Part shown: positions 3,952 through 63,996 of the stretch, piece after piece
Position numbering within the stretch: the first letter of the stretch is position 1
Layout: every line of letters begins with the position of its first letter
Virus record (IMG/VR): IMGVR_UViG_3300031857_000002
Coordinates: 186,001 to 250,000 of that record
DNA: 64,000 bases
Strand: one strand, 5' to 3'
Position numbers and translations under genes: made by a program
Notes under the pieces: generated by a model
Databases searched by the model: none
What the model was told of the DNA's origin: nothing
Seen by the model: the letters and a program-made list of their open reading frames with translations, nothing else

Positions 3952-3968
3952 ACGAACTATATTTACCG

Positions 3969-4850
3969 TCAGTCTGCGTTAGCTACTTTCTTGCTAGACG
4001 CCAACACAGTGGCTTCTACAGGCGGTGCAGGTTCAGCAGCCAGTTGATGTGGTGTTGCTGGCACAGGGTTTACAGGCACAGGCATGGACTTGGGCAAGCC
4101 GCCTGCCAAGTGCATTTCATGCAGATCTTGATAGAGTTTTTCGTGTGTGCCAAAGTCAAACACATAGGTACCTGTGTGCTTGAGCAACACACGTTTGTCC
4201 ACAAAAATCTGTCCACCTAGATCACGCCAGTTTTCACAGAATGTCCAGTCTTCTGAATAGTAGCGGCCTTCACGCACAGCAGTATCAAAGTAGGTTTTCA
4301 TGTGTACGTTGAGTGCAGGATCAAGTCCAATGTCATTGGTAAATGGCTTCACAGCAGGGTGTGCAGTGAGTTTGTCAAACACATGACGCTTCATGAGCAA
4401 GAAACCTGTGCCTGTTTTGGTAACTTCTACTAGACCACTTGGATCGTTTTCTTCTGCACCAGGAATGCCGTTCACACACCACTTGACCGGCAGGCTTTTC
4501 ATTGGATACAAACCACCAATAACGTCTTTGTCAGCATTGAGCAAGGCCAACAGGTGCCATGGCTCCCAGCCAATGTCTGCGTCAATAAACATCAGGTGTG
4601 TGCTACCTTCTGTGCAAAGGAACTTGGCAGTAAGGGTATTACGTGCTCGGCTGATCAGTGATTCATTGGTCATTGTTTCCACAGTCCAATCAATGCCCAA
4701 TTGGCGGCATGTATTGGCCCATTTAATAAAGCTCATGAATGTGGACTCAGTGAGTTGTCCGCCATAACAGGGCATGCAGATATGCACTCGTGTAGTCTTT
4801 AGATAATCAAGATTAACTTGAATTTGCTGTTCAGCCATTGGGTTCTCCAT
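3969..4850 (-). CDS. Glycosyltransferase (GT-A fold, GT2-like)
   Basis: ESLISRARN, FIDADIGW (DxD), GTGFLLMKRHVF and SEDWTFC motifs. Confidence 0.7.
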   Translation of the reverse strand: MENPMAEQQIQVNLDYLKTTRVHICMPCYGGQLTESTFMSFIKWANTCRQLGIDWTVETMTNESLISRARNTLTAKFLCTEGSTHLMFIDADIGWEPWHLLALLNADKDVIGGLYPMKSLPVKWCVNGIPGAEENDPSGLVEVTKTGTGFLLMKRHVFDKLTAHPAVKPFTNDIGLDPALNVHMKTYFDTAVREGRYYSEDWTFCENWRDLGGQIFVDKRVLLKHTGTYVFDFGTHEKLYQDLHEMHLAGGLPKSMPVPVNPVPATPHQLAAEPAPPVEATVLASSKKVANAD

Positions 4851-4894
4851 AAAATTGTGTAATATTTACATTGTAGCACAGCACTGGCAAAATT

Positions 4895-6013
4895 TCAAGC
4901 TCTTGTGATAAAATTGTAGAATTCTGGGTGAGTGTGTTGATAACTCTGATTGGTAATAGCATCGTAGTCTTGAATGTACTGTAAGAATGGACCATAAGGA
5001 TCGTCTACCACTGTGATATAACTACTGATATGCGCCAATTCAGGCACACAGGCAATGCGAGTTAACACAGCATCACGCACATCTGCAGTCATTGCAGTGG
5101 CCGAGCAATGTGCCCGTAATCCTGGGAACCAAGTGAACGCATTGTAATTTTTCTTTAACCAAGGAAATGTTCTATTCAGAAAGGCATCTAATTCAGCAAG
5201 ATAAAAAATGTTCAACATGCTGTAGGTAGTTTGTGCAAAGTAGTCAAAGTCTGGGCATTGTTTGCGGAACCAGTGCATGTTGTCCACAACACGAGCCCAG
5301 TCAGCACCATGGCGTTGATATTCAAATCGTTGGTCCATGTCATCAATGCTGAAGTACATGGTCACATGTTCACACTTGTTTAGAATATCCAAAAACTTTT
5401 TGTTTGGTCGTTGGGTGCCATTGGTCACAACAACAACTTCTAAATCATTGTAGTCTCGATACTTGCCCATGTTGGCAAAGAACTCTAGGTAGTTGGATTC
5501 CATAAACGGCTCGCCGCCCTGCATCTGCACAGTTTTTAGTGAGAGAAACAATTCAGGATCATCAATCACAGGTTGATTTCTAGCTTGGTATCTAGTGGCA
5601 GGATCAAAGTAATTCCATTCTGGCGGTGCAATAGCCTGCCACTTTGAACTACTCCACGGACCGCATATGGCACAGGCAAGGTTGCACAAGTTTCCCAGAT
5701 TCAAATCAATCTTGCCATTGCGAGAGCCACGTGGACGAAGGTTAGCAGTTTGCCTTGAACTTTGCAAGCCCATGCTTTCTGTGTGATAGCAAGTGTTGCA
5801 TCCTGCTACAGGACGTCCTGCCTCAGTCTCATCTCTAAGATGCTGTATCCAAGGCGCAGAGTTATGGCCATGATAGATTTGATCAAACCCTGTATTCAAC
5901 ACAGCAGTTTCTGCGCTTTGATAAAGGCAGCATGGTTTATGTGTTAACTGATCGTTGGTTTGGCTGAGATACATGCGGTCCTTAAGTTCCGCACAACGGG
6001 TATCTTGATTCAT
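4895..6013 (-). CDS. Radical SAM protein with additional N-terminal Cys motif
   Basis: CNLACAIC (CxxxCxxC), GGEPF, N-terminal KPCC...CNTC. Confidence 0.85.
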   Translation of the reverse strand: MNQDTRCAELKDRMYLSQTNDQLTHKPCCLYQSAETAVLNTGFDQIYHGHNSAPWIQHLRDETEAGRPVAGCNTCYHTESMGLQSSRQTANLRPRGSRNGKIDLNLGNLCNLACAICGPWSSSKWQAIAPPEWNYFDPATRYQARNQPVIDDPELFLSLKTVQMQGGEPFMESNYLEFFANMGKYRDYNDLEVVVVTNGTQRPNKKFLDILNKCEHVTMYFSIDDMDQRFEYQRHGADWARVVDNMHWFRKQCPDFDYFAQTTYSMLNIFYLAELDAFLNRTFPWLKKNYNAFTWFPGLRAHCSATAMTADVRDAVLTRIACVPELAHISSYITVVDDPYGPFLQYIQDYDAITNQSYQHTHPEFYNFITRA

Positions 6014-6016
6014 TGT

Positions 6017-7453
6017 TTATTGTTTTTTGGCTTCGTCAATATAGTCGGCATTTTCTTTAAATGCTAACTTGTTGGTTCTCAAACGGTTGATGGCAATTTC
6101 CAGAGCACGATCCAGTTTTAGATTCAGTGCTTGATAGTTGTCAGCGGCCGCGCCACGCACCAGCAAGCGAGTGTCAAAGTCCTGTTGCATTGCTGGCGTT
6201 AACAGTCCTTTGTATTCTAGTTTTTGTGACAGAGCATCCAACTGCTGTTGCTTTTTGATAGCCTGATCCAACTGTGCAATTCTGTTTTTTAGTACAGAAT
6301 GTTTTTCGCCAGGCTGTGCCACAGGCACAGCCGGTGGATTGAATCGTTGCTTGGGTTGTTGTCCTGCTAGTTTTGTACTGTTAGCACGGAAATCCTGTTC
6401 CCATTGGTCAACTTCTTGTTGACGTTGTTGTTCAATGTTTTGCTTGGCTTGCTGTAATGCGTTGAATGCATCAGGCTTGAGTCCTTCATACGTAGCAGCC
6501 CAGCCTTGATTTTCACTAACCTTGTCCGAAGATTCAAATGAGAAATCACTTGGTTTAAACTGTGGATACTTGGCAATAACTTTGGCAATGTACCGGTCCA
6601 GGATTTCATAGGGTATATCTGTAGCAACCAATTTAGGGATCTTGCCTGATCTCACATAGATGCTGACCTTGCCTGGATGCATGATTCTTTGAACAAATGG
6701 CCCTTCTGCTACTGGCTGGTTCTCGCGACGTTGGTAACCAGCAGTCATTCCGCCTACAAAGTTTTGTGCATCCACTTCGTCCAACCCACGTTGTTTTCTT
6801 TGTTTGTGTATGCTCTTGAATTGATTACGTTTGTTCGGGCGTGGAAGGTTATCCAACGCACTCTCATCTACTACACCCATTGCTGTGTCCAACAGTTTGA
6901 CCACAGTGGCAGCTAGTTTAGGATTGGTTTGTGTCTTGGGGTACAAGCTCATTACCAGAGCTGTTTTGCGTTTTTCGTTTAGCCGGGGCCATGCACCGCG
7001 AATCTCTGTTGCTGATGTCATGCCAGGACCAAACTCCACAGTAGGCAAGTAGGTCATGTAAGCACGTTGGCTTAAAGGCTGATCGCTAGCGTCATTGTAT
7101 GGTTGTAGATAACTGGGTGTGCCATCTTTCTTAGTGCCTCCAGGACGAGGCTGTGATCCTGCGTCTTTTTCACTGCGCACAAAGATCAACTGTGTGTTGT
7201 TGGGATCGTACTTGTGTACAATTTCTTCAGCACGAAAAGGTGATTTAACCTGTGTAAATCTACCTTTTGGGACACCTGCTAGTTGTGCAAGTTTTTCTTT
7301 GACCGGGAATGGAAACGGTCGTGTGCTGGTATCATTGGTAGCAGCCACATATACATCAGCACCAGGAAATGCTTCTACGGCAGATTGATAAAGTGCGGCG
7401 TGCCCCGCATGAAAAGGGTGAAATCCCCCGGGCATGATTACTAACTGTTTCAT
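6017..7453 (-). CDS. HxGH (cytidylyltransferase-like) nucleotidyltransferase with long modular C-terminal extension
   Basis: PGGFHPFHAGH at the N-terminus and TSATEIR (KMSKS-like); the extension is punctuated by VDE/LDE/VAE/VSE/IDE. Confidence 0.7.
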   Translation of the reverse strand: MKQLVIMPGGFHPFHAGHAALYQSAVEAFPGADVYVAATNDTSTRPFPFPVKEKLAQLAGVPKGRFTQVKSPFRAEEIVHKYDPNNTQLIFVRSEKDAGSQPRPGGTKKDGTPSYLQPYNDASDQPLSQRAYMTYLPTVEFGPGMTSATEIRGAWPRLNEKRKTALVMSLYPKTQTNPKLAATVVKLLDTAMGVVDESALDNLPRPNKRNQFKSIHKQRKQRGLDEVDAQNFVGGMTAGYQRRENQPVAEGPFVQRIMHPGKVSIYVRSGKIPKLVATDIPYEILDRYIAKVIAKYPQFKPSDFSFESSDKVSENQGWAATYEGLKPDAFNALQQAKQNIEQQRQQEVDQWEQDFRANSTKLAGQQPKQRFNPPAVPVAQPGEKHSVLKNRIAQLDQAIKKQQQLDALSQKLEYKGLLTPAMQQDFDTRLLVRGAAADNYQALNLKLDRALEIAINRLRTNKLAFKENADYIDEAKKQ

Positions 7454-7468
7454 AGCTAGTATTTAGCG

Positions 7469-8274: not shown

Positions 8275-8444
8275 TGATTAAGTTCAACTTCCACAATAAC
8301 TGAGTCGCCAACAAGTTCTTCAGTTACTGATGTTAGTGCTTGAACCACATCAGGAGTAGCAATGTCGCCAATCCCAATAACTTCAGTTTCTTTGATCAAC
8401 TTGTACAGTTTAATAACAATGATTTCTTCGTGTATTTTTGCCAT
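8271..8444 (-). CDS. Small hypothetical protein (57 aa, not in track)
   Basis: Manual translation MAKIHEEIIVIKLYKL...VIVEVELNQ; TAAATA 7 nt upstream; ATGA overlap with next gene. Confidence 0.65.
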   Translation of the reverse strand: MAKIHEEIIVIKLYKLIKETEVIGIGDIATPDVVQALTSVTEELVGDSVIVEVELNQ

Positions 8445-8454
8445 AGTGTTGTAT

Positions 8455-9117
8455 TTAGTTACGAGCCTGTATAGGCAGGGTCTTTCGAACCAGTTGTGGG
8501 CATGCTAGATTTATAAACAGCGCATCTTTTTCGTTGTCATGATCCACAAAGTAATTTGAAGGGATCCACATTCGTTGGCCGTTTAGTAACATTTTAAATC
8601 CTGGGCTGGGACGAAATTGATCTGCTCGTGTGAAAAAGTATTTCTTTATGAGTTCTCTTTGCGACTCATCTAGATAGCGTTCACGAAAATAGGTTCTAAA
8701 CTTGTGTTGGGGATTGTTTAGCACAACACAATCTGCGGGCAAACACACATCAGCTTGCTTGTGCTCAACTAACTTTGTGCCCGGATGTGCTACAACCGCC
8801 GCAAAATCTTCTGGAGTGTTGGTGTAGAACCACATGGTGTTGTTGCACACCACTTTCTTAAAGGGATTCTTGATGGCCAGCAAGAGATCACATACTTCGT
8901 GCAATCGTTCTTGATCACGATCTGATATAACTGTTCTAGTGCCACTGCTACGCCAATTCTGCAGATAGGTGTTACGCCAATAGATAGTGTTGTCAATACT
9001 TTTGTGGCTTAACTGGCGCATCATATTGCCTTCGGGAATCCACCATATCAAGCAGTGATAATACTGCTTGTAATATGGTTCGCTACGTTGCTCAATGTTT
9101 ACGTCAATATCAAACAT
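8455..9117 (-). CDS. Hypothetical protein
   Basis: Long ORF; start reassigned to MFDIDVN at 9117, which overlaps the clpA stop. Confidence 0.6.
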   Translation of the reverse strand: MFDIDVNIEQRSEPYYKQYYHCLIWWIPEGNMMRQLSHKSIDNTIYWRNTYLQNWRSSGTRTVISDRDQERLHEVCDLLLAIKNPFKKVVCNNTMWFYTNTPEDFAAVVAHPGTKLVEHKQADVCLPADCVVLNNPQHKFRTYFRERYLDESQRELIKKYFFTRADQFRPSPGFKMLLNGQRMWIPSNYFVDHDNEKDALFINLACPQLVRKTLPIQARN

Positions 9118-15120: not shown

Positions 15121-15738
15121 TTAAACTCCCATTACATGCAGTGCATGTTCATAATGATGAATACGATCTTCTAGGCCAATGTATCCACCGTTGATGGCTC
15201 GAGTGAGTCCACGAATATCGCCTGCGTCAGCAAAGCGATTTAAATTGTTTTGTTCCCAGAACCAGCAGGCACTTTGTGCGGCGCCTTCAAATGTAGCAAG
15301 ATACTCAGCGGCTTCTTCTTCTGAAATGCCTAGACTGCCTGCAAAGAATGTGTAGTTGTCTTTGCCTGTTAACTGTATCAAGCCACGACCGCAGTAGCGC
15401 CAGCCATCTCCGGACTCTTCTGGACCGTTGCCCATGCGACTGGCATACACTCTGTTGGCAATCTTTTCTGGCTTGTTGGCATACTGTGCAGCCAAGGCAT
15501 CTGTGGGGAAATACTTGGGAAATACCTTTCGCAAACTAGCGGCTTTGTAGTTCAAGTTCTCTTTGATGAACACAAAGTTGCCTGACTCATGTGCGCACTG
15601 TGCAATAAAAGCTGCCACCCGCTGTGGTGTGTTGATTTCGTAGTCATCCAACAATTGTTCTAGTGCATCATACCAGTGATCAATGTGTGGATTTTTAACC
15701 ATTTGTTTTAGTTGTTCTCGTGTGAGTATCGTGCTCAT
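15121..15738 (-). CDS. Glycoside hydrolase family 19 endolysin
   Basis: AAFIAQCAHES, YCGRGLIQLTGKDNY, RAINGGYIGLEDR. Confidence 0.9.
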   Translation of the reverse strand: MSTILTREQLKQMVKNPHIDHWYDALEQLLDDYEINTPQRVAAFIAQCAHESGNFVFIKENLNYKAASLRKVFPKYFPTDALAAQYANKPEKIANRVYASRMGNGPEESGDGWRYCGRGLIQLTGKDNYTFFAGSLGISEEEAAEYLATFEGAAQSACWFWEQNNLNRFADAGDIRGLTRAINGGYIGLEDRIHHYEHALHVMGV

Positions 15739-15770
15739 TTAACGGCTCCTTGTTTGTATTTAATCTTTTG

Positions 15771-16412: not shown

Positions 16413-17032
16413 TTGGCAACACTTTCAAATATTTGTTTTTGTGCTCGATACCATTCCTGCCAGGCTTTTAGTTTTTCTGCGTTTTCGTGGCAGGCGCCGT
16501 AGTTGTCGACGACTGTTTCAAGGAGTTGACTGGCTTTAATGTCGCTGGGGGTTCCATCAACTGACTCGGCACCTCGGGCCACTTCATTACGACTGGCACT
16601 GTCGTGGAGCACGATGCTAGACTTAGGCAAAGAGCACTGGCTATCAAGCTGTGCGCCAGCAACTTCTCTAATGATTTCTCGGTTTGCATATACAGTTTCC
16701 TTTACAACTTTGATCTTGGTAACAAATTTGGTTTCAATTACGGTGTTGACTTCACGACTTCGAGCTTCGGCAATCTGAACTTTTTCTTCTAGTTCTTTGA
16801 TTTTGGCCAGCCATTTTTCTTCATTGCCGCGCCAGCCAAAAAAGTAAGCACCCACGCACAGCAGTAACACACCCACTAGTTCAGCAGGCATGCGGTACTG
16901 CATCATTATAGGAATCCAACGCACCAGCTTAGAAGCAATGTACAACAGCAAGCCTGCCGCAAATATCGCATAGGTCAACATGACAAAAATGCTGTCAGGC
17001 AACAAGCTAAACATCCACACCAACTGGTCCAT
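16409..17032 (-). CDS. i-spanin (Rz-like)
   Basis: N-terminal TMs, coiled coil, C-terminal LHDSAS...VVDNYGACHENAEKL; embedded lipoprotein gene. Confidence 0.75.
   Translation of the reverse strand: MDQLVWMFSLLPDSIFVMLTYAIFAAGLLLYIASKLVRWIPIMMQYRMPAELVGVLLLCVGAYFFGWRGNEEKWLAKIKELEEKVQIAEARSREVNTVIETKFVTKIKVVKETVYANREIIREVAGAQLDSQCSLPKSSIVLHDSASRNEVARGAESVDGTPSDIKASQLLETVVDNYGACHENAEKLKAWQEWYRAQKQIFESVAK
16468..16689 (-). CDS. o-spanin (Rz1-like lipoprotein) embedded in the +1 frame of the i-spanin
   Basis: Lipobox LASC followed by a Pro-rich segment, STTVPVVMKWPEVPSQLMEPP. Confidence 0.7.
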   Translation of the reverse strand: MQTEKSLEKLLAHSLIASALCLSLASCSTTVPVVMKWPEVPSQLMEPPATLKPVNSLKQSSTTTAPATKTQKN

Positions 17033-17084
17033 ATCAGTCCTTTATATAGATGTATTTATTGGATCTGTAGGTTTGATGTAGCAG

Positions 17085-18724: not shown

Positions 18725-19515
18725 TCTAATCCCAGTTCTTTTCTAATAGCAGTGGCCGAAATTGAATGAGTTGCAGAATCAAATGATTCTTGTTCTATCT
18801 TGTAGCCCACGTCTCGACCGTAGGTGATATTTACTATGTTGGGCACAACTTGTATTTCGTATTGACCTTGATATAACATGTCTAGATCTCTACGTATATA
18901 ATTCCTCACCTGTTCTATAGCAAAGGGATTTGATCCTTGCCAGCCTTGACAATCTCTAATTTGAATTACCACTTGACCTGTTTTTGCAATGGCACGTTCA
19001 AACAACTTGCGATGTCCTGCATGCCATGGTTGCCAACGACCTAGCATTTGCACAGTTTCTTTCTGCCAATCGAATACAGGGCGTCTGCGATTATCTAAGA
19101 TATGTGCGGCCACAAACTCGCCCCACTTCTCACCATGCTGTTCAGTGATGCGGAAATCATATTGCTCAGGCGGAACGAATGCTTTATTAGTATCTTCGTA
19201 GCGGCCCTGATCAATGGTGTCAACCCATATGGTCCAGTCTGCTTTGAAATTGTTGCGCATGTCAACCAAGGGAGCCACAAAGTCACAGATCACATAGTCT
19301 ACATCTGTCATTGCATCTGCCAGTTCGCGCATACGTAAACTCTGACGTATACGGCCTGCTTCACTGAAATCCCAGTCGTTGTATTTTTTACGTACATCGT
19401 CGGCATTTAACCAACCCACACGTTTCTTTTCTGCTTGCAAGTGGTCTACAATGTGTTGTGCCAGGTATGTTTTGCCGGCCCCTGGCAGGCCCATGATTAA
19501 AATACGTTGTGTCAT
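18721..19515 (-). CDS. cysC: Adenylylsulfate kinase (CysC-like) fused to a C-terminal HxGH nucleotidyltransferase domain
   Basis: GLPGAGKT P-loop, LNADDVRK, DFSEAGRIRQ, ICDFVAP; then GRWQPWHAGH. Confidence 0.8.
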   Translation of the reverse strand: MTQRILIMGLPGAGKTYLAQHIVDHLQAEKKRVGWLNADDVRKKYNDWDFSEAGRIRQSLRMRELADAMTDVDYVICDFVAPLVDMRNNFKADWTIWVDTIDQGRYEDTNKAFVPPEQYDFRITEQHGEKWGEFVAAHILDNRRRPVFDWQKETVQMLGRWQPWHAGHRKLFERAIAKTGQVVIQIRDCQGWQGSNPFAIEQVRNYIRRDLDMLYQGQYEIQVVPNIVNITYGRDVGYKIEQESFDSATHSISATAIRKELGLE

Positions 19516-19520
19516 GCTAT

Positions 19521-19533
19521 TATTTACTAAGTA
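19521..19533. promoter_or_regulatory. Back-to-back TAAATA (minus) / TAAGTA (plus) late-type promoter pair
   Basis: Sequence CAT-gctat-TATTTA-c-TAAGTA-atttt-ATG; each motif is 5 nt from a divergent start codon. Confidence 0.55.
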
Positions 19534-19538
19534 ATTTT

Positions 19539-29008: not shown

Positions 29009-29018
29009 GATATGTTAT

Positions 29019-32363: not shown

Positions 32364-32377
32364 AGGAATATTTACAC

Positions 32378-36377: not shown

Positions 36378-36398
36378 GATATTCTCCTAAACTAATAT

Positions 36399-37725: not shown

Positions 37726-37731
37726 ACTGTA

Positions 37732-37760
37732 ATTATAATACAGTTAATCAGCAAAGTCAA
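37732..37760 (-). promoter_or_regulatory. sigma70 promoter (ATG 6 nt after -10)
   Basis: TTGACT-N17-TATAAT. Confidence 0.7.
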
Positions 37761-46790: not shown

Positions 46791-46808
46791 AATCTAATCC
46801 TGTTGGAG

Positions 46809-46859
46809 TATTTACCAAAAACTTTGTACCTGGCTACACAGTTTGGTTTGTGCTAAATA
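46809..46859. promoter_or_regulatory. Divergent TAAATA late-type promoters for two fibre genes
   Basis: TATTTA 46809-46814 (18 nt from the 46790 start, AGGA RBS) and TAAATA 46854-46859 (19 nt from the 46879 start, GGAG RBS). Confidence 0.6.
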
Positions 46860-46878
46860 TGAACAGTTGGAGTGATCA

Positions 46879-49867: not shown

Positions 49868-50415
49868 TATAGTCTTTCGTTGCAAACGTCCCAGTCAATG
49901 ATCTTCCAGATATTGTCTAGGTAACGTTCTTTGTCTGCTTGGTAATCCAAGGCCCAGGCGTGTTCCCACCAGTCCACTAACACACAGATGTCTGTGCGAA
50001 CAGCATGGTTAGCAATGGTTTTAATGTCACCACCAGTGCTCAAATAAACCCAACCAGATCCTTGAATCTTCATTGCGGCTTGTTTGAATTCTTCTTTGAA
50101 ATCTTCCCAGGTTTCAAAGTGTTCTTCTATCAGCGCAAGTACTGCACCTCGGGGCCGGTTGGCGCCTTTGGGAGGCCTAAGCTGAGGGAAAAACTTGTTG
50201 TGTAAAAAACTGCCAGCACGATTAAAATCCGCATTGCCTTCTCCTGCATTGTAGCGTTTGGCATAGCCTTTGGCCAAATGCTCAAAATGATAGTCTATAG
50301 TTTCCTTGCTCATTATGGGTTCAAGGTCTTTGATACCATAAGGTAAAGGCGTGGTTTCCAGTTTTGCCGGACGGGTGCTTGCTTCTACAAGATTGATGTG
50401 GTCGCGTAGTTCCAT
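49867..50415 (-). CDS. sod: Fe/Mn superoxide dismutase with capsid-targeting-like N-terminal extension
   Basis: LPY...LEP.MS.ETIDYH, LHNKFF, GSGWVYL, DWWEHA (four metal ligands); starts [11 protein letters not shown]. Confidence 0.88.
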
Positions 50416-50422
50416 GTTGTAT

Positions 50423-50641
50423 TTATTTGCGACGAGTGATACGTCCCTTGGAGAGATCGTAAGGACTAAACTCTAGTTCAACCCTGTCTCCTAGCAACAC
50501 CTTGATGTTGTTCTTGCGCATACGTCCAGATAAGTGTGCTACAACCAAGTTTGGTAAATTGTCTAATTTAATGCGGAACATGGCAGCGGGTAAAACTTCT
50601 TCTACTCGACCTTCCATGTTGATAATATCTTCTTTTGCCAT
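50423..50641 (-). CDS. infA: Translation initiation factor IF-1
   Basis: MAKED...[12 protein letters not shown]...[32 protein letters not shown]. Confidence 0.93.
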
Positions 50642-50651
50642 AAGCAATTAC

Positions 50652-51113
50652 TTATTCGAACGTCAATTCCGCAGTGATCTTCTTTAATCGATCCATTCGG
50701 AAACTGCGCCAGGCTTGAGCTTCTAGATCAAACACCTTGATCACAGCAGGATCTGATTCCTTCCGGGGTTTTTTGGATTCGGTTACCAGCCCGTCCACAC
50801 GTCCCACAATGGAAGCACTGTATGACATAACCGCCATTGGGGGGTTTTCAGGAATCAAGTCCCAGTTTAAGGTACACTTCATGTCACGTTCGGTGCCGTC
50901 TGCTTTGGTAAAGCGTATGGTGATTTCTTGTTTGTTCAACAAGCTCTTGACCCAGTCACGCATGATGGTCTTGTTGACATCATCTGCTTCTTGGTACATT
51001 GTGCCTGGAGCTCCTTTGAGAAGTCGTACAACTTCTTGTTTTTCCCACATATCGGTACTCATAATTCCATCCATAATAATTTCTCTATTGGTTAACAAAC
51101 GTTTCTTAATCAC
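50652..51113 (-). CDS. WYL/SH3-like beta-barrel phage protein
   Basis: FTKADGTERDMKCTL...VFDLEAQAWRSFR; start position uncertain. Confidence 0.65.
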   Translation of the reverse strand: MIKKRLLTNREIIMDGIMSTDMWEKQEVVRLLKGAPGTMYQEADDVNKTIMRDWVKSLLNKQEITIRFTKADGTERDMKCTLNWDLIPENPPMAVMSYSASIVGRVDGLVTESKKPRKESDPAVIKVFDLEAQAWRSFRMDRLKKITAELTFE

Positions 51114-51981: not shown

Positions 51982-52208
51982 TTTCGTAATAACTCCATGG
52001 TATATTCGGTGTCTCTCATGTAGGCCACAGGTTTTAGCCACCCTGCGGTGATCGCAGTGACCAAAATACTCTTGTATTCAGCAGGACAGTTGTTGCTAAT
52101 TTCAAATGCCGCACGTGACACCAGTTGAATGCCATCGGGAGAAAACGTGAAATCTGGATCTCCGGGACGCAGAGTTTTAACAGATCGACTTGTAGTAATC
52201 TTAAACAT
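51978..52208 (-). CDS. Small hypothetical protein
   Basis: MFKITTS start 6 nt after TATAAT. Confidence 0.55.
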   Translation of the reverse strand: MFKITTSRSVKTLRPGDPDFTFSPDGIQLVSRAAFEISNNCPAEYKSILVTAITAGWLKPVAYMRDTEYTMELLRK

Positions 52209-52214
52209 GCTAGT

Positions 52215-52243
52215 ATTATAGCATAACAAGATTTAGTGGTCAA
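52215..52243 (-). promoter_or_regulatory. sigma70 promoter
   Basis: TTGACC-N17-TATAAT. Confidence 0.75.
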
Positions 52244-52543: not shown

Positions 52544-53118
52544 TTGCGTTCTCCGTAAAAAATGTGACGTCCAATTTTTTCAATTTTGGGATGATTCCAT
52601 CCTGGGTTTACATAGTCTGCATGATAGTAAAGTGCTTTCTGCAAACTGGGCAATCTAAAGCCTTCCAGCAGGACCTTCTTGGCCACTTCTTCTGATTCAC
52701 GCCACATGGGTTTGTGTACTGGTTTGACTTTGTGATTGTTTTCGCAGTACCATGAGAATTGGCATACTACTTTTTCGTAGAACACATTTTTCTGATGCAC
52801 CACACCGCAAACTGAATTGGCAAACTTGCCCGATTGCATGCGATTCATTGTGACCTGGGCCACTGCTACTTTGCCTTCAAACGGCTCACTTGCGGCTTCC
52901 CAGTAGATGTTGCGTGTTAGACATTCCAGCTGACGTGTTTGTTCTGCGGCAGTGACATATCCCTCAGGCATGCCCAAGCGAACATTGCGTAGACTATCAA
53001 GGCGAGCATCACAAACTGCTACCACTGCTATTGCCACTGCCACAAATCCCACAGTCTTGAGAACACGCGAGATCCAAGGTACGAAGTCAATATTTTTTAA
53101 AGTTAGGTTTGTTTCCAT
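52540..53118 (-). CDS. SleB-like cell wall hydrolase (Hydrolase_2)
   Basis: CLTRNIYWEA.SEP..GKVAVAQVTMNR, CQFSWYC, ALYYHADYV.P.W, IGRHIFY; N-terminal TM. Confidence 0.9.
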   Translation of the reverse strand: METNLTLKNIDFVPWISRVLKTVGFVAVAIAVVAVCDARLDSLRNVRLGMPEGYVTAAEQTRQLECLTRNIYWEAASEPFEGKVAVAQVTMNRMQSGKFANSVCGVVHQKNVFYEKVVCQFSWYCENNHKVKPVHKPMWRESEEVAKKVLLEGFRLPSLQKALYYHADYVNPGWNHPKIEKIGRHIFYGERK

Positions 53119-53213
53119 AGGCTTTTACTTACTCAGATGGGTTGATATTCCGGAAAGACCGGGCCAAAATGAAGCATTATTACCATTAAGTAGGTAGTTA
53201 TCCTACTCAATGT

Positions 53214-57285: not shown

Positions 57286-57772
57286 CCGTTTCCCATGTCT
57301 TTGCAACAGGTGCCAGGGCAGTTGCCAAGGGCACAAGAGCATCTCCTTCGCCGGGGCAACCTGTGTACCATACGCCATCCTTCATGATGTAGTAGTACTC
57401 TGCGCCACAGTTCTCAACCTGTACCATGAAGTCTGCAAAGGTCATAGCTGACTTAAACTCTGTACCTTGCTCACCACGGTCACGACCGTAGAATGTGGTC
57501 CAACCTTCTTTTTCTGCTTGCTCGTGCGTTGCCATGAGCTTGGCAAAATCTGGCGACTCATTGCTGATCTCAAACTTTGAGAAAGGATGTGCGTCACCAA
57601 TCTTTACACCCAGTGAACTGATGTCGCCTAGTGCCACAAGATGGTTGGCTCGAGCCGAGTCATAGTGCTCTTGCAAGATGCGACCATTGTGGTCCAGATA
57701 GCCATCCCAGTGGCAGTAAACTGATTTGCAGACATCACCGTGCATGACACCAATTCTTGAACGTGTACCCAT
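57275..57772 (-). CDS. Phage hypothetical protein
   Basis: MGTRSRIG...SVYCHWDGY...AEYYY. Confidence 0.7.
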   Translation of the reverse strand: MGTRSRIGVMHGDVCKSVYCHWDGYLDHNGRILQEHYDSARANHLVALGDISSLGVKIGDAHPFSKFEISNESPDFAKLMATHEQAEKEGWTTFYGRDRGEQGTEFKSAMTFADFMVQVENCGAEYYYIMKDGVWYTGCPGEGDALVPLATALAPVAKTWETVDL

Positions 57773-57780
57773 TTTGAGCT

Positions 57781-57831
57781 CCTTTTTAATTACTATACAA
57801 GTATTATAACAGTTTGGGATTTATTGGTCAA
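57781..57831 (-). promoter_or_regulatory. sigma70 early promoter cassette 2 (28-nt repeat copy)
   Basis: TTGACC-N17-TATAATACTTGTATAGTAATTAAAAAGG. Confidence 0.88.
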
Positions 57832-58181: not shown

Positions 58182-58189
58182 TTCGGAAT

Positions 58190-58524: not shown

Positions 58525-58532
58525 TTCCAAGT

Positions 58533-58626: not shown

Positions 58627-58860
58627 TTATACAACAAGGTATTTGTACGCAAGACCCGCAAGTCCTGTGGCCAGCATAACCCCATTGGTCACAATCAAGC
58701 TGGCTTCACGCCAACGGATGCTGACAACAAGCCAAATTAACCCGCCAACGGCCAGGGTTATTGGTCCTTCGGGATAGTAGCCCAGAGAGTTGATTGCAGT
58801 TCCTGCAATAAGGATCACTGTGGCGATCCACTTCAGATACCAGTTTAGATCTTTTTTCAT
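58627..58860 (-). CDS. Small 3-TM membrane protein
   Basis: LKWIATVILIAG...GGLIWLVVSIRWRE.SLIVTN. Confidence 0.65.
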   Translation of the reverse strand: MKKDLNWYLKWIATVILIAGTAINSLGYYPEGPITLAVGGLIWLVVSIRWREASLIVTNGVMLATGLAGLAYKYLVV

Positions 58861-58866
58861 ACCCTA

Positions 58867-58895
58867 ATTATAGCAGTTTAGGAATATTCGGTCAA
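58867..58895 (-). promoter_or_regulatory. sigma70 promoter (ATG 6 nt after -10)
   Basis: TTGACC-N17-TATAAT. Confidence 0.75.
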
Positions 58896-60854
58896 CCGGC
58901 ACCAGTTGCCTTGTTTTTCCCAGTTGAGTTTGAATCCGTAATGAAACCCATCCATGGTGGGGTTGCCATTGGGTCCGTTGCCTTTAAGGTCATAGTCAAA
59001 AACTGCATGCCAGTCACCTTGAGCATCAATTTTAAACTGGTGTCTAGCTCGGTATTCTGTGTACTGATCGTTGGGACACTTGTCAGGACCAAACTCGGCC
59101 ATGTCCAAGTCAGGATCAAACCGCAGATCAATTTCAAATGCACCCACGGCCAAGTGCAACACTCTCAACAAAGGCCATATCTCGTTGATCAAACTGTCAG
59201 CTACAGGATTGATAGATGTTTTGATAATATCATAATCAAAATTGTCATCGTAAGGGATCATGTCTTGAATGCTGTCAGGCTGGTAGGTCAGTGTGTAGTG
59301 ATTTTCTACCCCAGCTCTTTCTTGGGCATAGTAAATATGCTCAGACACACTACCATTGTATCCAGGCATATGTCGGCGAAGATGATTCAGCAGGATGTTT
59401 ACTGTTTTGTATCTTACCAGGCGATGTATGATTGTGTTGGTGTAGTCTTCTGTGACCCAGTGTGCGGCATAGTGCCCATGACTCATACCAAACTTTTCAC
59501 GCTCGTTGTGCAAGGGCGTATCAAGGTTTACGTTGCATACTGTAAAACTCCAGCCGTTGAGACTGGTTTTTCTTGTGCGCCACAGCAGAGTCATTGTGTG
59601 TGCCATGTCTACTGGCTGTTCACCAGGAAACCCCACAAACCAGTTGGAATGTGCCTGTATGCCCACCTTGGTCATGTCAAACAAGTTTTGCTCTATGTGT
59701 TCAATTTTGACATTTTTCTTCATGAGATCCAGCACTTTTTGTGAACCAGATTCAATGCCCAAATTTAACACATTGCACCCACCATCTTTGAGGTCTTGTA
59801 AATATTCAATGTCCATGCGTCCGTCACATCGGGCATAGCCTAGCCAGGCTATTTTGATATCACGCTCTACTAGACCCCGGGAAAATGCACGTAGTTCTTT
59901 GAGATTGCCATTGACCAAGCTGTCAATAAACCACACCGCTTCTATGCCATAGGTACGATACTGATATTCAATCTCGTCCACAATGTTGCCTGCAAGACGT
60001 CCACGATAACGCCAGAATGTGGTTTCACTGCAGAACTGGCACTTGGCCACACACCCGCGACTGATCTCAGAACTAACGCCTGTGCCCATGCTGTACAGGC
60101 TCAAGTCAAAGTCCGAATAGTCAGGCCAGGGCATACTGTCAAGATCTACTCGCACAGCCTTGTCATGGTACAACACACGTTCAGGAATCTCAATACCTGC
60201 TTCGTGCTTTTCCAGAATGTCTAAGAAGATCAACTCACCTTCACCTACCACAAGATGATTGTATAGTTCGGGCTCTTTGACTTTTTCCTGGATGGCTTGC
60301 GGGCCACCGCCAATGATTTTTACCGCGGGCAGGAGTTGTTTAATTTCACGTATGATCCAGTTGGTGCAGTCATTGTTGGTGTAGTATAGAGTAAAGCCTA
60401 TGATATCTGGGGCAAATGCCACAATCTTGTCCACCCATTCGCGTAGGCAAGGCTCAATGATGTGATGCACCTGCTCGTGATAACACATGCTCCACTTCCA
60501 ATCAAGATATCCATCCCACAAGGTTTTGTCTGTGGCTTGGTAGGCAGCAATGTTGATATCGAACGCTCGAGTAGCAAATCCACTGCCTTTGGCAAGAGCT
60601 GTTAATCTAGCCACATTATACGGAGCAATGTATGCACCCCACTCAGGTGCAATCACCATGGCCACTCGTGTGCGACGTGTGACTTCAGGTTGATTCAGCA
60701 CCACTGCTGTGACGTTCTTTTGTGAGACAGGCCTGCTCAACTCTTTCATGACTTCAAGCATCACAAGATGCTTGTCGTCGGTTACAGATATTTCTTGTTC
60801 TGCAGGAGCAGGAGTATTGCTACTTTGTATAGCAATAATTTTTGGTATGGTCAT
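58878..60854 (-). CDS. B12-binding-domain radical SAM protein
   Basis: N-terminal cobalamin-binding-like domain (DIIGFTLY, IIGGGPQA); SRGCVAKCQFC; GIESGSQKVLDLMKK. Confidence 0.88.
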   Translation of the reverse strand: MTIPKIIAIQSSNTPAPAEQEISVTDDKHLVMLEVMKELSRPVSQKNVTAVVLNQPEVTRRTRVAMVIAPEWGAYIAPYNVARLTALAKGSGFATRAFDINIAAYQATDKTLWDGYLDWKWSMCYHEQVHHIIEPCLREWVDKIVAFAPDIIGFTLYYTNNDCTNWIIREIKQLLPAVKIIGGGPQAIQEKVKEPELYNHLVVGEGELIFLDILEKHEAGIEIPERVLYHDKAVRVDLDSMPWPDYSDFDLSLYSMGTGVSSEISRGCVAKCQFCSETTFWRYRGRLAGNIVDEIEYQYRTYGIEAVWFIDSLVNGNLKELRAFSRGLVERDIKIAWLGYARCDGRMDIEYLQDLKDGGCNVLNLGIESGSQKVLDLMKKNVKIEHIEQNLFDMTKVGIQAHSNWFVGFPGEQPVDMAHTMTLLWRTRKTSLNGWSFTVCNVNLDTPLHNEREKFGMSHGHYAAHWVTEDYTNTIIHRLVRYKTVNILLNHLRRHMPGYNGSVSEHIYYAQERAGVENHYTLTYQPDSIQDMIPYDDNFDYDIIKTSINPVADSLINEIWPLLRVLHLAVGAFEIDLRFDPDLDMAEFGPDKCPNDQYTEYRARHQFKIDAQGDWHAVFDYDLKGNGPNGNPTMDGFHYGFKLNWEKQGNWCRLTEYS

Positions 60855-60862
60855 ACCAATAC

Positions 60863-61087
60863 TTATTCACGGAACTTTTTATTCCCGAATTCTTTGTTCA
60901 CATAGTACTGAATCAGTCTGCGCTGGATCATGGTCACCAAGTCACCATTGTCATCTTCTATGAGAAATCTCACAGGGCAGTTGCCCCATTTGGCACTGGC
61001 GTTGAATTCAGCAAACCAAGTGCGGTGGTCCTTGTTGGCAGGATCAAACACCACGAAGGGGCGACTGTGTAATGCTAAACGGCTCAT
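60863..61087 (-). CDS. Small hypothetical protein
   Basis: 74-aa ORF, ATGA-coupled to upstream gene. Confidence 0.6.
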   Translation of the reverse strand: MSRLALHSRPFVVFDPANKDHRTWFAEFNASAKWGNCPVRFLIEDDNGDLVTMIQRRLIQYYVNKEFGNKKFRE

Positions 61088-62762: not shown

Positions 62763-62812
62763 ATGTGAGTTCCAAGTTGGTTAATAATGTGTAGCGTTAG
62801 GCTACATGATGA

Positions 62813-62841
62813 ATTATACTTGAACTAGGAATTGTTGTCAA
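62813..62841 (-). promoter_or_regulatory. Consensus sigma70 promoter for the ParB-like operon
   Basis: TTGACA-N17-TATAAT; the -35 overlaps the MTase stop codon. Confidence 0.8.
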
Positions 62842-63737
62842 GCAGTTTCGTACTCAAATAATCTCTCAGCAGGAGGTGCGTTATCATAGTGATCCTCAAT
62901 GCGACGACGACTGATATCAACATAGTGCTGGCTCATGTCAATTCCAACAAAGTTACAGCCTTCTTTTAAAGAACCAATGCCAGTGGATCCAGATCCCATA
63001 AACGGATCTAGTACTAGGCCGCCTTTTGGGGCATATACCCTGGCCAAGTATCTCATGAGGTCAATGGGTTTGGGAGTGGGATGGTCATTGTATTCGCCTC
63101 GTTCCTTGCGTGTGGCACGTGGCGCATAAAAGTATTTTTGGTGGTCAGGTTCATCAAAGTGGCCAATAATATTACTAGGGTATCTGCCGTTGGGGTTGGC
63201 ATCTTCAGTTTCTTTCACAGCCTGTTCAGATGCCTTGGCTACGTCACCACCAAATGCTCTACGTTTGCTACCGCCCTTGACCCAACCTGTAGGAGGCTTG
63301 CCGTCCCACGGCACCCGTGTTGTAGTTGTATTAATTTGACCACATCCCCATTTCTCAAAGTTGGCTTTGATAGATCCTTCTAGTGGCTTTTGTGCTACAA
63401 AGATAGGTTCGTGTGCGGGTTTGAGTCGATTGGCTTTGGCCATCTTGGTAGTGACCATCCATACCACCATGTCAAGTGGTCGGAAGCCTGCATCCTCAAC
63501 GTTCACTGCCATACGGTGATAGAATTCTGGAGCACAGAATGACAACACAAACGCACCCGGCTTGAGCACTCGGTAAACTTCCTGCCAAGTTTCAACTGGT
63601 GGCACGTCATGATCCCAACCTACACCAGCAATTTCCATTCCGTAAGGTGGATCCGTGATGCAGGCGTCAATAGAATTTTCTGCCATGGTTTGCATGGCTG
63701 TGATGTTGTTGGAGCAGATTAAGTTGTATGTGTTCAT
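62838..63737 (-). CDS. DNA amino-methyltransferase (N6A/N4C), beta class
   Basis: ITDPPY (motif IV) before HPTPKP and DPFMGSGST (motif I). Confidence 0.92.
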   Translation of the reverse strand: MNTYNLICSNNITAMQTMAENSIDACITDPPYGMEIAGVGWDHDVPPVETWQEVYRVLKPGAFVLSFCAPEFYHRMAVNVEDAGFRPLDMVVWMVTTKMAKANRLKPAHEPIFVAQKPLEGSIKANFEKWGCGQINTTTTRVPWDGKPPTGWVKGGSKRRAFGGDVAKASEQAVKETEDANPNGRYPSNIIGHFDEPDHQKYFYAPRATRKERGEYNDHPTPKPIDLMRYLARVYAPKGGLVLDPFMGSGSTGIGSLKEGCNFVGIDMSQHYVDISRRRIEDHYDNAPPAERLFEYETA

Positions 63738-63744
63738 ATGTTAT

Positions 63745-63996
63745 TTACAGATTTTTAAGAATGTTGATTACATTTTGTTCACGGCGGGTACGATCAAGAC
63801 CGTTGCAGGTCTTTCTGTACCAATCATTGTTGCCTTTGCCCCATCCAACGATACCTCGCAAACTAGGTCGGCTGGCACATTCTTGAACATCTTTGTCATA
63901 CCCATCAACGGTGCGAATTTCTTTCACAAACTCGGCGTACTTTGCTAAAACTTTGTTGTAGTAATTGTAGGTTTTGTCATTCATCAGGTCTGCCAT
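63745..63996 (-). CDS. Hypothetical protein
   Basis: 83-aa ORF at the window edge. Confidence 0.5.
   Translation of the reverse strand: MADLMNDKTYNYYNKVLAKYAEFVKEIRTVDGYDKDVQECASRPSLRGIVGWGKGNNDWYRKTCNGLDRTRREQNVINILKNL

What the first reader, a model, noticed from the sequence alone, without database searches (positions are those of the whole stretch)
3952..63747. TAA(A/G)TA motif 4-8 nt before SD-less start codons: widespread leaderless late mRNAs
Seen: TAAATA lies N8 before 3951, N6 before 7453, N7 before 8444, N5 before 19515, N7 before 29008, N7 before 30594, N5 before 32363, N4 before 50415 and N4 before 63737. TAAGTA lies N5 before 19539, N7 before 50641, N7 before 53118 and N5 before 60854. 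None of these has an SD. A second class has the motif N18-20 upstream with a clear SD (15738, 17032, 36377, 46790, 46879). Knowledge: T4 gp55 late promoters are a lone TATAAATA with the start site a few nt downstream. Inference: a bimodal design in which many late genes are leaderless or nearly so.
Basis: partly seen in the sequence, partly recalled or inferred. Interest (0 to 1): 0.62.

Follow-up and report, generated by a model that had tools for sequence, protein, structure and literature searches.

The report
Late promoter boxes abutting start codons
In this uncultivated 320-kb freshwater jumbo phage, about half of the T4-style late promoters and some host-type early promoters sit so close to the ATG that the mRNAs should have no leader; this layout is conserved in the phage's clade, absent from four cultured relatives, and no transcript start has been mapped.

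Summary
All 18 listed sites exist. The window is part of a 320,175-bp IMG/VR jumbo-phage contig. Genome-wide, TAAATA lies 4-8 nt before 28 called ATGs, against 1.5 expected from dinucleotide shuffles (maximum 7). It lies 17-28 nt before another 28, and almost never at 9-16 nt. The near class lacks a Shine-Dalgarno (SD) sequence and the far class has one.

The phage encodes a gp55-family late sigma factor. Both classes precede virion and lysis genes. Host-type TTGACC-N17-TATAAT promoters show the same split: the ATG lies either exactly 6 nt downstream, which puts its A at the canonical +1, or about 30 nt downstream behind an SD leader.

Near-class ATGs have a pyrimidine at -1, weakly folded 5' ends, and are usually the first possible start in the ORF. 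Across 79 related contigs only the box and the ATG are conserved. T4, PA5oct, GAP32 and Atu_ph07 have no near class.

Leaderless expression is the best reading, but no 5' end could be mapped. I rate it a new variant of known kinds (T4-type late promoters; phiYS40-type leaderless phage mRNAs).

The parts
3949..3965 (-). Near class: TAAATA (3960-3965), 8 nt, ATG 3951. No SD. Gene for a 1864-aa protein (1317 aa lie in the window).
   Evidence: the ortholog in G001 keeps the box, spacer and ATG
7451..7465 (-). Near class: TAAATA (7460-7465), 6 nt, ATG 7453. 478-aa protein.
8442..8457 (-). Near class: TAAATA (8452-8457), 7 nt, ATG 8444. 57-aa protein.
19513..19526 (-). Near class: TAAATA (19521-19526), 5 nt, ATG 19515. 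264-aa kinase-like protein (phrog_10255). One of a divergent pair whose start codons lie 23 nt apart.
19528..19541 (+). Near class: TAAGTA (19528-19533), 5 nt, ATG 19539. 375-aa protein. The other member of the divergent pair.
29006..29021 (-). Near class: TAAATA (29016-29021), 7 nt, ATG 29008. 446-aa protein.
   Evidence: in G001 the upstream sequence has diverged while the box, spacer and ATG are identical
30592..30607 (-). Near class: TAAATA (30602-30607), 7 nt, ATG 30594. 199-aa virion structural protein (phrog_12928).
32361..32374 (-). Near class: TAAATA (32369-32374), 5 nt, ATG 32363. 102-aa protein. The G001 ortholog starts at the same Met but has an AGGA in place of the box.
50413..50425 (-). 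Near class: TAAATA (50420-50425), 4 nt, ATG 50415. 182-aa protein. The TAA of the box is also the stop codon of the upstream gene.
50639..50654 (-). Near class: TAAGTA (50649-50654), 7 nt, ATG 50641. 72-aa protein.
53116..53131 (-). Near class: TAAGTA (53126-53131), 7 nt, ATG 53118. 192-aa endolysin-like protein (phrog_938).
60852..60865 (-). Near class: TAAGTA (60860-60865), 5 nt, ATG 60854. 658-aa protein. The G001 ortholog has TAAATA at 4 nt.
63735..63747 (-). Near class: TAAATA (63742-63747), 4 nt, ATG 63737. 299-aa DNA methyltransferase (phrog_67).
15736..15762 (-). Far class: TAAATA (15757-15762), 18 nt including an AGGAG SD, ATG 15738. 205-aa endolysin (phrog_181).
17030..17058 (-). Far class: TAAATA (17053-17058), 20 nt with an SD, ATG 17032. 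207-aa protein.
36375..36401 (-). Far class: TAAATA (36396-36401), 18 nt with an SD, ATG 36377. 67-aa protein.
46788..46814 (-). Far class: TAAATA (46809-46814), 18 nt with an SD-like AGGA, ATG 46790. 870-aa protein.
46854..46881 (+). Far class: TAAATA (46854-46859), 19 nt with an SD, ATG 46879. 892-aa tail-fibre-like protein.
32345..32380 (+). Far class: TAAGTA (32345-32350), 27 nt, ATG 32378. 222-aa protein, divergent from the gene that starts at 32363.
37723..37760 (-). Host-type promoter abutting an ATG: -35 TTGACT at 37755-37760, -10 TATAAT ending at 37732, 6 nt, ATG 37725. No SD. 76-aa protein.
52206..52243 (-). Host-type promoter abutting an ATG: -35 TTGACC at 52238-52243, -10 ending at 52215, 6 nt, ATG 52208. 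No SD. 76-aa protein.
58858..58895 (-). Host-type promoter abutting an ATG: -35 TTGACC at 58890-58895, -10 ending at 58867, 6 nt, ATG 58860. No SD. 77-aa protein.
57770..57831 (-). Host-type promoter with the conserved 30-nt SD-bearing early leader, ATG 57772. The same cassette precedes ATG 58181, 58524 and (31 nt) 57225.
4848..4868 (-). Outlier in the gap: TAAATA (4863-4868), 12 nt, ATG 4850. No SD. 293-aa protein.

Best explanation
TAA(A/G)TA is the lone -10-like box of late promoters read by host RNA polymerase carrying the phage's gp55-family sigma factor.

In T4 the 8-bp box occupies -13 to -6, so transcription starts about 6 nt after it. In this phage the box lies in one of two places.
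1. Near class: 4-8 nt before an ATG, peaking at 4-5 nt. The A of the ATG is then at or within 1-3 nt of the start site. The mRNA has no room for an SD and would be translated as a leaderless mRNA, with a 70S ribosome binding the 5'-terminal AUG.
2. Far class: 17-28 nt before the ATG. This leaves a minimal leader of 12-23 nt that is essentially an SD plus its spacer.

The empty interval at 9-16 nt is the range in which a leader is too long to be leaderless and too short to hold a working SD.

Host-type TTGACC-N17-TATAAT promoters follow the same rule: the ATG lies at 6 nt or at about 30 nt. The infected cell must therefore already translate leaderless mRNAs early in infection.

High-copy virion proteins (sheath, tube, major capsid, baseplate) use an SD. 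Lower-copy proteins (portal, endolysin-like protein, methyltransferase, kinase) are often of the near class. This suggests the two modes set dosage.

Shown: the architecture, its enrichment, its conservation, the sigma gene and the gene classes. Inferred: the exact start sites, translation from the 5' AUG, and the dosage role.
For: Enrichment and bimodality
- 28 near boxes against 1.5 in shuffles, 28 far boxes against 3.4, and a gap at 9-16 nt.
- The same histogram appears in G001, a 331,654-bp relative.
- 20 of 23 orthologous near-class genes keep the layout, and 19 of those 20 protein alignments start at residue 1.

SD usage
- 81% of near-class genes have an anti-SD duplex weaker than -3 kcal/mol.
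- 69% of far-class genes have one of -5 kcal/mol or stronger.

Sigma factor and timing
- A gp55-family sigma is present.
- T4's box spans -13 to -6 (PMC2988020).
- Far-class genes include tail sheath, tube, adaptor, baseplate wedge and hub, and an endolysin. Near-class genes include portal, two virion proteins, an endolysin-like protein and a DNA methyltransferase.

Independent calibration
- Full -35/-10 host-type promoters sit exactly 6 nt from SD-less ATGs at 8 genes, which places the A at the canonical +1.

Start-site and start-codon features
- A pyrimidine occupies -1 before the ATG in 89% of near-class genes against 49% of the rest (Fisher p = 4e-6).
- The first 30 nt from the AUG fold more weakly (-0.67 against about -1.8 kcal/mol, p = 6e-4).
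- In 29 of 36 genes the ATG is the first possible start in the ORF, and only 7 of 36 have a downstream SD-led alternative.
- PHROG profiles align from the first residues of several near-class proteins.

Context
- 16 of 36 near-class genes have no same-strand gene ending within 400 nt upstream.
- Divergent gene pairs have start codons only 23-48 nt apart, each with its own box.
- One near-class box directly follows a hairpin plus T-run (G000 gene 39316-40719).

Phylogenetic footprint
- In 30 distinct upstream sequences of one ortholog group, only the box columns (0.9-1.0 conserved) and the ATG plus coding triplets are conserved. The 33 columns upstream score 0.3-0.6.
Against: - No transcript 5' end was mapped. 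The four RNA libraries that hold related sequence are available only as assembled contigs. Some of these run across the predicted start sites: X18 spans 50379-50690 and X17 spans 50236-50651. That fits read-through transcripts or DNA carry-over and cannot decide the question.
- With T4's spacing the start falls on the A only at d=5. The 11 genes at d=4 need initiation one position earlier, and those at d=7-8 would carry a 2-3 nt leader.
- About 40% of genes with no recognisable promoter also lack a good SD, so SD-independent internal initiation clearly exists in this phage and could serve some near-class genes too.
- The host is unknown, so its capacity for leaderless translation is inferred only from the early-promoter layout.
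- My gene starts come from a simple ATG-preferring caller. The start-call-free test mitigates this but does not remove it.
Confidence: 0.7

Rival explanations
1. The near boxes are real late promoters, but the adjacent gene is translated mainly from longer read-through or polycistronic transcripts by SD-independent initiation on an unstructured A/U-rich start region. The short spacing would only reflect genome compaction, with the promoter serving the genes downstream.
For: Many promoter-less genes also lack an SD. RNA-library contigs cross two predicted start sites. In 8 of 36 cases the TAA of the box doubles as the stop codon of the upstream gene, which shows tight packing.
Against: - Compaction does not predict a sharp 4-8 nt peak, an empty 9-16 nt interval, or a pyrimidine at -1.
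- Sixteen of 36 genes have no same-strand gene ending within 400 nt upstream, and several are divergent pairs.
- Host-type promoters sit at exactly 6 nt.
- Spacing is conserved while the flanks drift.
Confidence: 0.17
2. The hexamer acts at the RNA level rather than as a promoter. It could be an A/U-rich translational enhancer or a cleavage site for an endoribonuclease that trims transcripts next to the AUG.
For: The box is A/U-rich and lies where ribosomal protein S1 contacts mRNAs. Cleavage there would also produce near-leaderless mRNAs.
Against: - The same hexamer lies upstream of the SD in the far class, too far from the ATG for an enhancer.
- It matches 6 of the 8 positions of the T4 late box, and the cognate sigma family is encoded.
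- Relatives use the same box only at 13-45 nt.
- Bona fide -35/-10 promoters show the same two spacings.
Confidence: 0.08
3. Artefact: chance matches in AT-rich intergenic DNA, TAA stop codons of upstream genes, or wrongly called start codons.
For: The box contains TAA. 7 of 36 genes have a downstream in-frame start with an SD. Gene calls are my own.
Against: - Shuffles give 1.5 against 28 observed, and the genome is 45% G+C.
- Only 8 of 36 boxes overlap a stop codon.
- The test without gene calls gives 0.21 here against 0.005-0.022 in T4, PA5oct and GAP32.
- Orthologs align from residue 1, and codon periodicity in conservation begins at the ATG.
Confidence: 0.03

Closest known systems
T4 late promoters (gp55 sigma; TATAAATA at -13 to -6)
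   Same: - A lone A/T-rich -10-like box with no conserved -35 element, placed upstream of virion and lysis genes.
- A homologous sigma factor.
- The far class resembles T4's layout. In T4 I find the box 13-29 nt before starts (PMC2988020).
   Different: - The box is a 6-mer, TAA(A/G)TA.
- The sigma has an insertion of about 165 aa and lacks T4 gp55's C-terminal clamp-binding tail.
- No gp45 homolog was found.
- T4 has no boxes 4-8 nt from ATGs.
Predicted ATAAATA late promoters of RaK2-like and related jumbo phages (CBB, GAP32, PA5oct, Atu_ph07)
   Same: - The same sigma subfamily (phrog_12791; 35-41% identity).
- A similar box predicted before structural genes (PMC5259590).
- I find the box 16-45 nt upstream in PA5oct, GAP32 and Atu_ph07.
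   Different: None of these four genomes shows a near-ATG class. The fraction of boxes followed by an ORF-opening ATG at 4-8 nt is 0.005-0.007 for PA5oct and GAP32, against 0.21 here. For Atu_ph07 only the gene-call histogram was run: boxes at 19-34 nt and none at 4-6 nt. The bimodal design is specific to this freshwater clade among the genomes tested.
Thermus phage phiYS40 leaderless middle and late mRNAs; '-10 region adjacent to ORFs' in Deinococcus-Thermus
   Same: A phage that produces most of its middle and late transcripts without a leader (PMC3594737). Host genes with the -10 element directly next to the ORF (PMC12340547).
   Different: - A different phage lineage, host phylum and promoter type: host sigma with a -10 element rather than a gp55-type box.
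- Here only about half of the late promoters are of this kind, alongside an SD-bearing class.
- phiYS40 is reported to shift the IF2/IF3 balance. No IF3 gene was found here.
Lambda cI mRNA from PRM, and other single leaderless phage genes
   Same: The transcript starts at the A of the AUG. There is no SD. (Own knowledge.)
   Different: Those are isolated cases in their genomes. Here about 45 of 343 genes are affected, across two promoter classes.
phiKZ-like and AR9 jumbo phages
   Same: Jumbo phages with mapped transcription start sites.
   Different: They use phage-encoded multisubunit RNA polymerases. No leaderless transcript was detected in phiKZ (PMC8244752), and AR9 5' UTRs are 26-491 nt (PMC5312081). 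No RNA polymerase beta-type gene was found here.

Membership tests
T4-type (gp55-dependent) late transcription | The phage encodes a gp55-family sigma factor | tested here: met
   G000:C1:61984-62883 (-), 299 aa. phrog_12791 E 1e-74 and phrog_234 E 3e-24. BLASTP to T4 gp55 gives 35% identity over 74 aa, E 2e-9. The N-terminal motif and core columns are invariant.
T4-type (gp55-dependent) late transcription | A lone A/T-rich -10-like box related to TATAAATA, with no -35 element | tested here: met
   TAA(A/G)TA corresponds to the last 6 positions of the T4 box. There is no conserved position upstream, either in the position counts or in the 30-sequence footprint.
T4-type (gp55-dependent) late transcription | The box precedes late (virion, lysis) genes | tested here: met
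   Sheath, tube, adaptor, baseplate, portal, virion proteins and endolysins. Timing itself was not measured.
T4-type (gp55-dependent) late transcription | Activation by the gp45 sliding clamp through C-terminal tails of gp55 and gp33 | tested here: not met
   No phrog_223 (gp45) match in the genome. The sigma lacks the C-terminal tail of T4 gp55. gp33 was not searched. CBB was likewise reported to lack gp33 and gp45 (PMC5259590).
T4-type (gp55-dependent) late transcription | Transcription starts about 6 nt downstream of the box | not testable with these tools
   Only assembled RNA contigs were available.
Leaderless mRNA | The primary 5' end lies at, or within a few nt of, the A of the start codon | not testable with these tools
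   Indirect support only: box-to-ATG distance of 4-8 nt, -10-to-ATG distance of exactly 6 nt for host-type promoters, and a pyrimidine at -1.
Leaderless mRNA | No Shine-Dalgarno sequence | tested here: met
   Median duplex energy -0.5 kcal/mol, and 81% weaker than -3.
Leaderless mRNA | AUG start codon and an accessible, weakly folded 5' end | tested here: met
   All near-class starts are ATG. This is weak evidence, because 337 of 343 genes use ATG under my caller. Folding energy of +1..30 is -0.67 against about -1.8 kcal/mol, p = 6e-4.
Leaderless mRNA | Translated from the 5'-terminal AUG (70S initiation) | not testable with these tools
   No proteomic or ribosome data. Support for the start codon comes from ortholog and profile alignments that begin at residues 1-13.
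Host sigma-70-type promoters | -35 TTGACN, a 16-18 nt spacer, and -10 TANAAT | tested here: met
   72 matches in the genome, strongly clustered before genes. 8 lie at d=6 and at least 12 at d=28-31 with a conserved leader.

The most novel reading that the evidence does not exclude
The two modes form a deliberate translation-dosage and timing system that the phage itself tunes. It encodes ribosomal protein bS21 behind a TAAATA box with an SD (G000:C1:287889-288113). Late in infection this bS21 would enter host ribosomes and shift initiation preference between SD-led and leaderless or SD-less phage mRNAs. Promoter-to-ATG distance and a phage ribosomal protein would then jointly set virion stoichiometry.
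Probability: 0.1. Interest if true: 0.8.

Novelty: new variant of a known kind. Interest (0 to 1): 0.55.

Why it matters
Promoter type and translation mode are usually treated separately in phage annotation. If the reading is right, the distance between a 6-nt box and the ATG decides whether a late gene is made from a leaderless mRNA or an SD-led one. That would apply to about one gene in eight in an abundant clade of freshwater jumbo phages: at least 600 IMG/VR stretches carry this sigma factor, and the phage's DNA is held in lake and freshwater runs from 14 studies.

- It gives a simple sequence rule for finding gene starts and late genes in these uncultivated genomes.
- It predicts that the unknown host translates leaderless mRNAs efficiently.
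- It offers a natural set of matched promoters for testing how gp55-type holoenzymes choose start sites.
- It allows a test of whether leaderless initiation is used to set protein stoichiometry.

The precedent, phiYS40, comes from a different phylum and a different promoter system.

Tried and rejected
- Megablast of 6.6 kb against cultured phages found nothing. The genome is an uncultivated IMG/VR record.
- Searches for a phage multisubunit RNA polymerase (PF00562), gp45 (phrog_223) and IF3 (PF00707) found nothing.
- RNA evidence. One run search found four metatranscriptomes holding 5-20% of the sampled words. Laid on window 44700-50690, they give only assembled contigs at 90-99% identity. Contig ends (for example 50649 and 50651, inside a box) most likely mark where strains diverge, and other contigs cross the predicted start sites. 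No conclusion can be drawn about starts.
- Host identification.
  - Relatives cannot be drawn for a virus record.
  - The protein atlas returned only viral bS21 clusters.
  - The genome-contig scan with bS21 gave its best hits (55-60% identity) on short contigs binned as Chitinophagales and Polynucleobacter MAGs, which are probably mis-binned phage fragments.
  - The permuted tmRNA scores best with the alphaproteobacterial model.
  - The host is left open.
- The bS21-encoding lake phages of Chen et al. 2022 (PMC9723584) looked like a match by size and habitat. They have 31-34% G+C and predicted Bacteroidetes hosts, whereas this phage has 45% G+C, canonical TTGAC/TATAAT promoters and SD use. 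I do not equate them.
- Stop-codon overlap as the source of the motif was rejected: it applies to 8 of 36 boxes.
- An extended T4-like 8-mer was rejected: positions -1 and -2 are only weakly biased.
- The phiYS40 primary paper is not held. I cite a review and my own knowledge instead.

Full report
**What the window is.** The 64-kb window is bases 186,001-250,000 of a 320,175-bp linear IMG/VR virus record, estimated 92% complete. It has about 45% G+C. It has no near-identical cultured relative. Its ClpA-like ATPase and its late sigma factor are 35-41% identical to those of PA5oct-like, RaK2-like (GAP32, CBB), Atu_ph07 and Phosso jumbo phages. DNA of this phage is held in lake and freshwater metagenomes from 14 studies. 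I called 343 genes with a simple codon-usage, ATG-preferring caller; 91% of the genome is coding and 284 genes lie on the minus strand.

**Checking the observation.** Genome-wide, the number of TAAATA boxes at each distance d between box and called ATG is as follows.

| d (nt) | TAAATA boxes |
|---|---|
| 4 | 10 |
| 5 | 9 |
| 6 | 2 |
| 7 | 5 |
| 8 | 2 |
| 9-16 | 2 in total |
| 17-28 | 28 |

- TAAGTA adds 7 near and 7 far cases. It is the only one-mismatch variant with clear enrichment.
- Dinucleotide-preserving shuffles of the upstream 60-mers give 1.48 (maximum 7) and 3.40 (maximum 11) for the two intervals.
- TAAATA is 49-fold enriched at d=3-9, where only SD hexamers are as frequent. It is the top hexamer at d=16-26.
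- Without any gene calls, 34 of the 157 genomic TAAATA copies are followed at 4-8 nt by an ATG that opens an ORF of at least 50 aa.
- The near class lacks an SD (median anti-SD duplex -0.5 kcal/mol, below the random median of -2.1). The far class has one (median -5.8).
- Only 8 of 36 near boxes use their TAA as the stop codon of the upstream gene.

**What the box is.**
- The genome encodes a gp55-family sigma factor at G000:C1:61984-62883. It scores phrog_12791 E 1e-74 and phrog_234 E 3e-24, and is 35% identical to T4 gp55 across the core.
- Compared with T4 gp55 it has an insertion of about 165 residues and lacks the C-terminal clamp-binding tail, as do its homologs in PA5oct, GAP32 and Atu_ph07. 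No gp45 was found.
- Far-class boxes precede the genes for tail sheath, tail tube, head-tail adaptor, baseplate wedge and hub, a tape-measure-like protein, virion proteins, an endolysin and SbcD.
- Near-class boxes precede the genes for portal, two virion structural proteins, an endolysin-like protein, a DNA methyltransferase, a kinase-like protein and a radical-SAM protein.
- No position outside the hexamer is conserved.

This is the signature of a T4-type late promoter with a shortened consensus. A similar ATAAATA box and gp55-like sigma were predicted for CBB and GAP32 (PMC5259590).

**Why the near class is best read as leaderless.**
1. *Spacing.* T4's box spans -13 to -6 (PMC2988020), so +1 is the sixth nucleotide after it. 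With d=5 that nucleotide is the A of the ATG, and d=4-8 lies within the usual play of start-site choice.
2. *Independent calibration.* 72 host-type TTGACN-N16-18-TANAAT promoters occur in the genome. Their distance to the next gene start is also bimodal. It is exactly 6 nt at 8 SD-less genes, three of them in the window at ATG 37725, 52208 and 58860. It is 28-31 nt at 12 or more genes that share a nearly identical SD-bearing leader. For such promoters +1 is the seventh nucleotide after the -10 hexamer, which is again the A of the ATG.
3. *Start-site signature.* The base before the ATG is a pyrimidine in 89% of near-class genes against 49% elsewhere (p = 4e-6). In the relative G001 the figures are 70% against about 50% (p = 0.025). 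This matches the pyrimidine(-1)/purine(+1) preference of start sites.
4. *Folding.* The first 30 nt from the AUG fold more weakly than in other genes (-0.67 against about -1.8 kcal/mol, p = 6e-4). An accessible 5' end is the known requirement for leaderless translation (PMC8459731, listed).
5. *Start codons.* The ATG is the first possible start codon of its ORF in 29 of 36 genes. Only 7 of 36 have a downstream in-frame start with an SD. PHROG profiles and orthologs align from the first residues.
6. *Context.* Sixteen near-class genes have no same-strand gene ending within 400 nt upstream. Three divergent pairs have start codons 23-48 nt apart with one box each; in the window these are 19515 and 19539. 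One box directly follows a hairpin and T-run.
7. *The far class sets a limit.* In its shortest members (d=17) the SD begins 6-8 nt after the box, which would be the very 5' end of the predicted transcript. The interval 9-16 nt cannot hold a functional SD. This explains the gap.

**Conservation.**
- G001, a 331,654-bp IMG/VR relative, has a sigma 95% identical and a median protein identity of 87%. It shows the same histogram: 33 TAAATA boxes at d=4-8 and 1 at d=9-16.
- It keeps the near layout in 20 of 23 orthologous pairs and the far layout in 22 of 26.
- The sigma gene retrieves at least 600 stretches from IMG/VR. Among the 79 best loci (79-99% identity) the call-free histogram again peaks at 4-6 and 16-24 nt, and the TATAAT histogram peaks at 6 nt.
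- For one ortholog group with 30 distinct upstream sequences, conservation is 0.3-0.6 across 33 upstream columns, 0.9-1.0 over the box, 0.4-0.7 in the spacer, and then shows codon periodicity from the ATG onward. A second group keeps the box while the spacing shifts between 4 and 5 nt.
- These loci are orthologous, so they show constraint rather than independent origins.

**Specificity to this clade.** I ran the same gene calls and histograms on T4, PA5oct, GAP32 and Atu_ph07, and the call-free test on the first three. All four use the box, but at 13-29, 16-32, 19-45 and 19-34 nt respectively, and none has a near class. The fraction of boxes followed at 4-8 nt by an ORF-opening ATG is 0.21-0.22 in this phage and G001. 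It is 0.022 in T4, 0.007 in PA5oct and 0.005 in GAP32. Published start-site maps of phiKZ and AR9 report no leaderless transcripts. A full-text search for 'leaderless', 'T4-like' and 'late promoter' together returned one unrelated paper.

**Precedents.** phiYS40 of Thermus makes most middle and late mRNAs leaderless (review PMC3594737). Deinococcus-Thermus genomes commonly place the -10 element next to ORFs (PMC12340547). Lambda cI is a single-gene case (own knowledge).

**What remains inferred.**
- No 5' end is mapped. The RNA libraries that hold related sequence are available only as assembled contigs, some of which cross the predicted starts.
- The 11 genes at d=4 need initiation one position closer to the box than in T4.
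- About 40% of promoter-less genes also lack a good SD, so another SD-independent route exists and may contribute.
- The host is unknown. Hints are a permuted tmRNA that scores best with the alphaproteobacterial model, canonical -35/-10 promoters, and G+C near that of some freshwater Proteobacteria. The bS21-based scan was not informative.
- Because early, host-polymerase promoters already use the leaderless layout, I infer that the host's own ribosomes handle such mRNAs.
- High-copy proteins carry an SD: sheath, tube, and the major capsid protein at G000 40783-41979. Portal and enzymes do not. A dosage role is plausible but untested.

**Verdict.** The thing is a new variant of known kinds: a T4-type late promoter system whose box is placed, in about half of the cases, so that transcripts should begin at the start codon. 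Confidence is about 0.9 that the box is the late promoter and about 0.7 that near-class genes are expressed from leaderless or near-leaderless mRNAs.

Noticed in passing
G000:C1:287889-288113 (-), outside the window (locus L081:7889-8110): The phage encodes ribosomal protein bS21 (PF01165, 64.6 bits against a cut-off of 27). The gene lies behind a TAAATA box at 24 nt, with an SD. Its nearest protein-atlas clusters are viral.
   Followed up: partly
G000:C1:136698-148365, outside the window (locus L074): An island of 26 tRNA genes plus a permuted (two-piece) tmRNA with tag ANDEQFALAA. Scores: Rfam tmRNA_permuted 104 bits, alpha_tmRNA 64 bits. G001 has 24 tRNAs, and ARAGORN reports no tmRNA there.
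   Followed up: partly
window 57225-58583 (-), also 55020-55077 and 51783-51836; at least 12 copies genome-wide: A repeated early cassette: TTGACC-N17-TATAAT followed by a nearly identical leader of about 30 nt that ends in an SD, in front of small genes. The conserved leader may be an operator or a translational control element.
   Followed up: partly
window 19516-19538; also G000 152085-152112 and 182776-182823: Divergent gene pairs have start codons only 23, 28 and 48 nt apart, each gene with its own box 4-7 nt upstream. The two promoters are interleaved on opposite strands.
   Followed up: yes
window 32363 (-) and its G001 ortholog (G001 153088-153405): The orthologous proteins start at the same Met. 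This phage has box-N5-ATG without an SD, while the relative has an AGGA and no box. This is a switch of expression mode between close relatives.
   Followed up: yes
window 23379 (-), inside the ORF 22741-23700: TAAATA-N7-ATG lies in frame inside a 319-aa signal-peptide-like protein gene. It could be an internal start giving a shorter isoform, or a chance match.
   Followed up: no
window 44700-45800 (gene 44178-46790, 870 aa): Metatranscriptome contigs show many skips and back-joints of 320-775 nt inside this gene. This suggests internal repeats and strain-level length variation in a large virion-type protein that has no PHROG match.
   Followed up: no
window 9110-11434 (-): A 753-774 aa ClpA/Lon-like AAA+ ATPase (phrog_4871, E 4e-233), shared with PA5oct-like, Atu_ph07-like and Acinetobacter jumbo phages at about 39% identity.
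   Followed up: no
G000:C1:61984-62883 (-) (locus L070:1984-2880): The late sigma gene has both a host-type promoter (TTGACA-N16-TACAAT) and an overlapping TAAGTA box 23 nt before its ATG, with an SD. This suggests early onset followed by autoregulated late expression.
   Followed up: no
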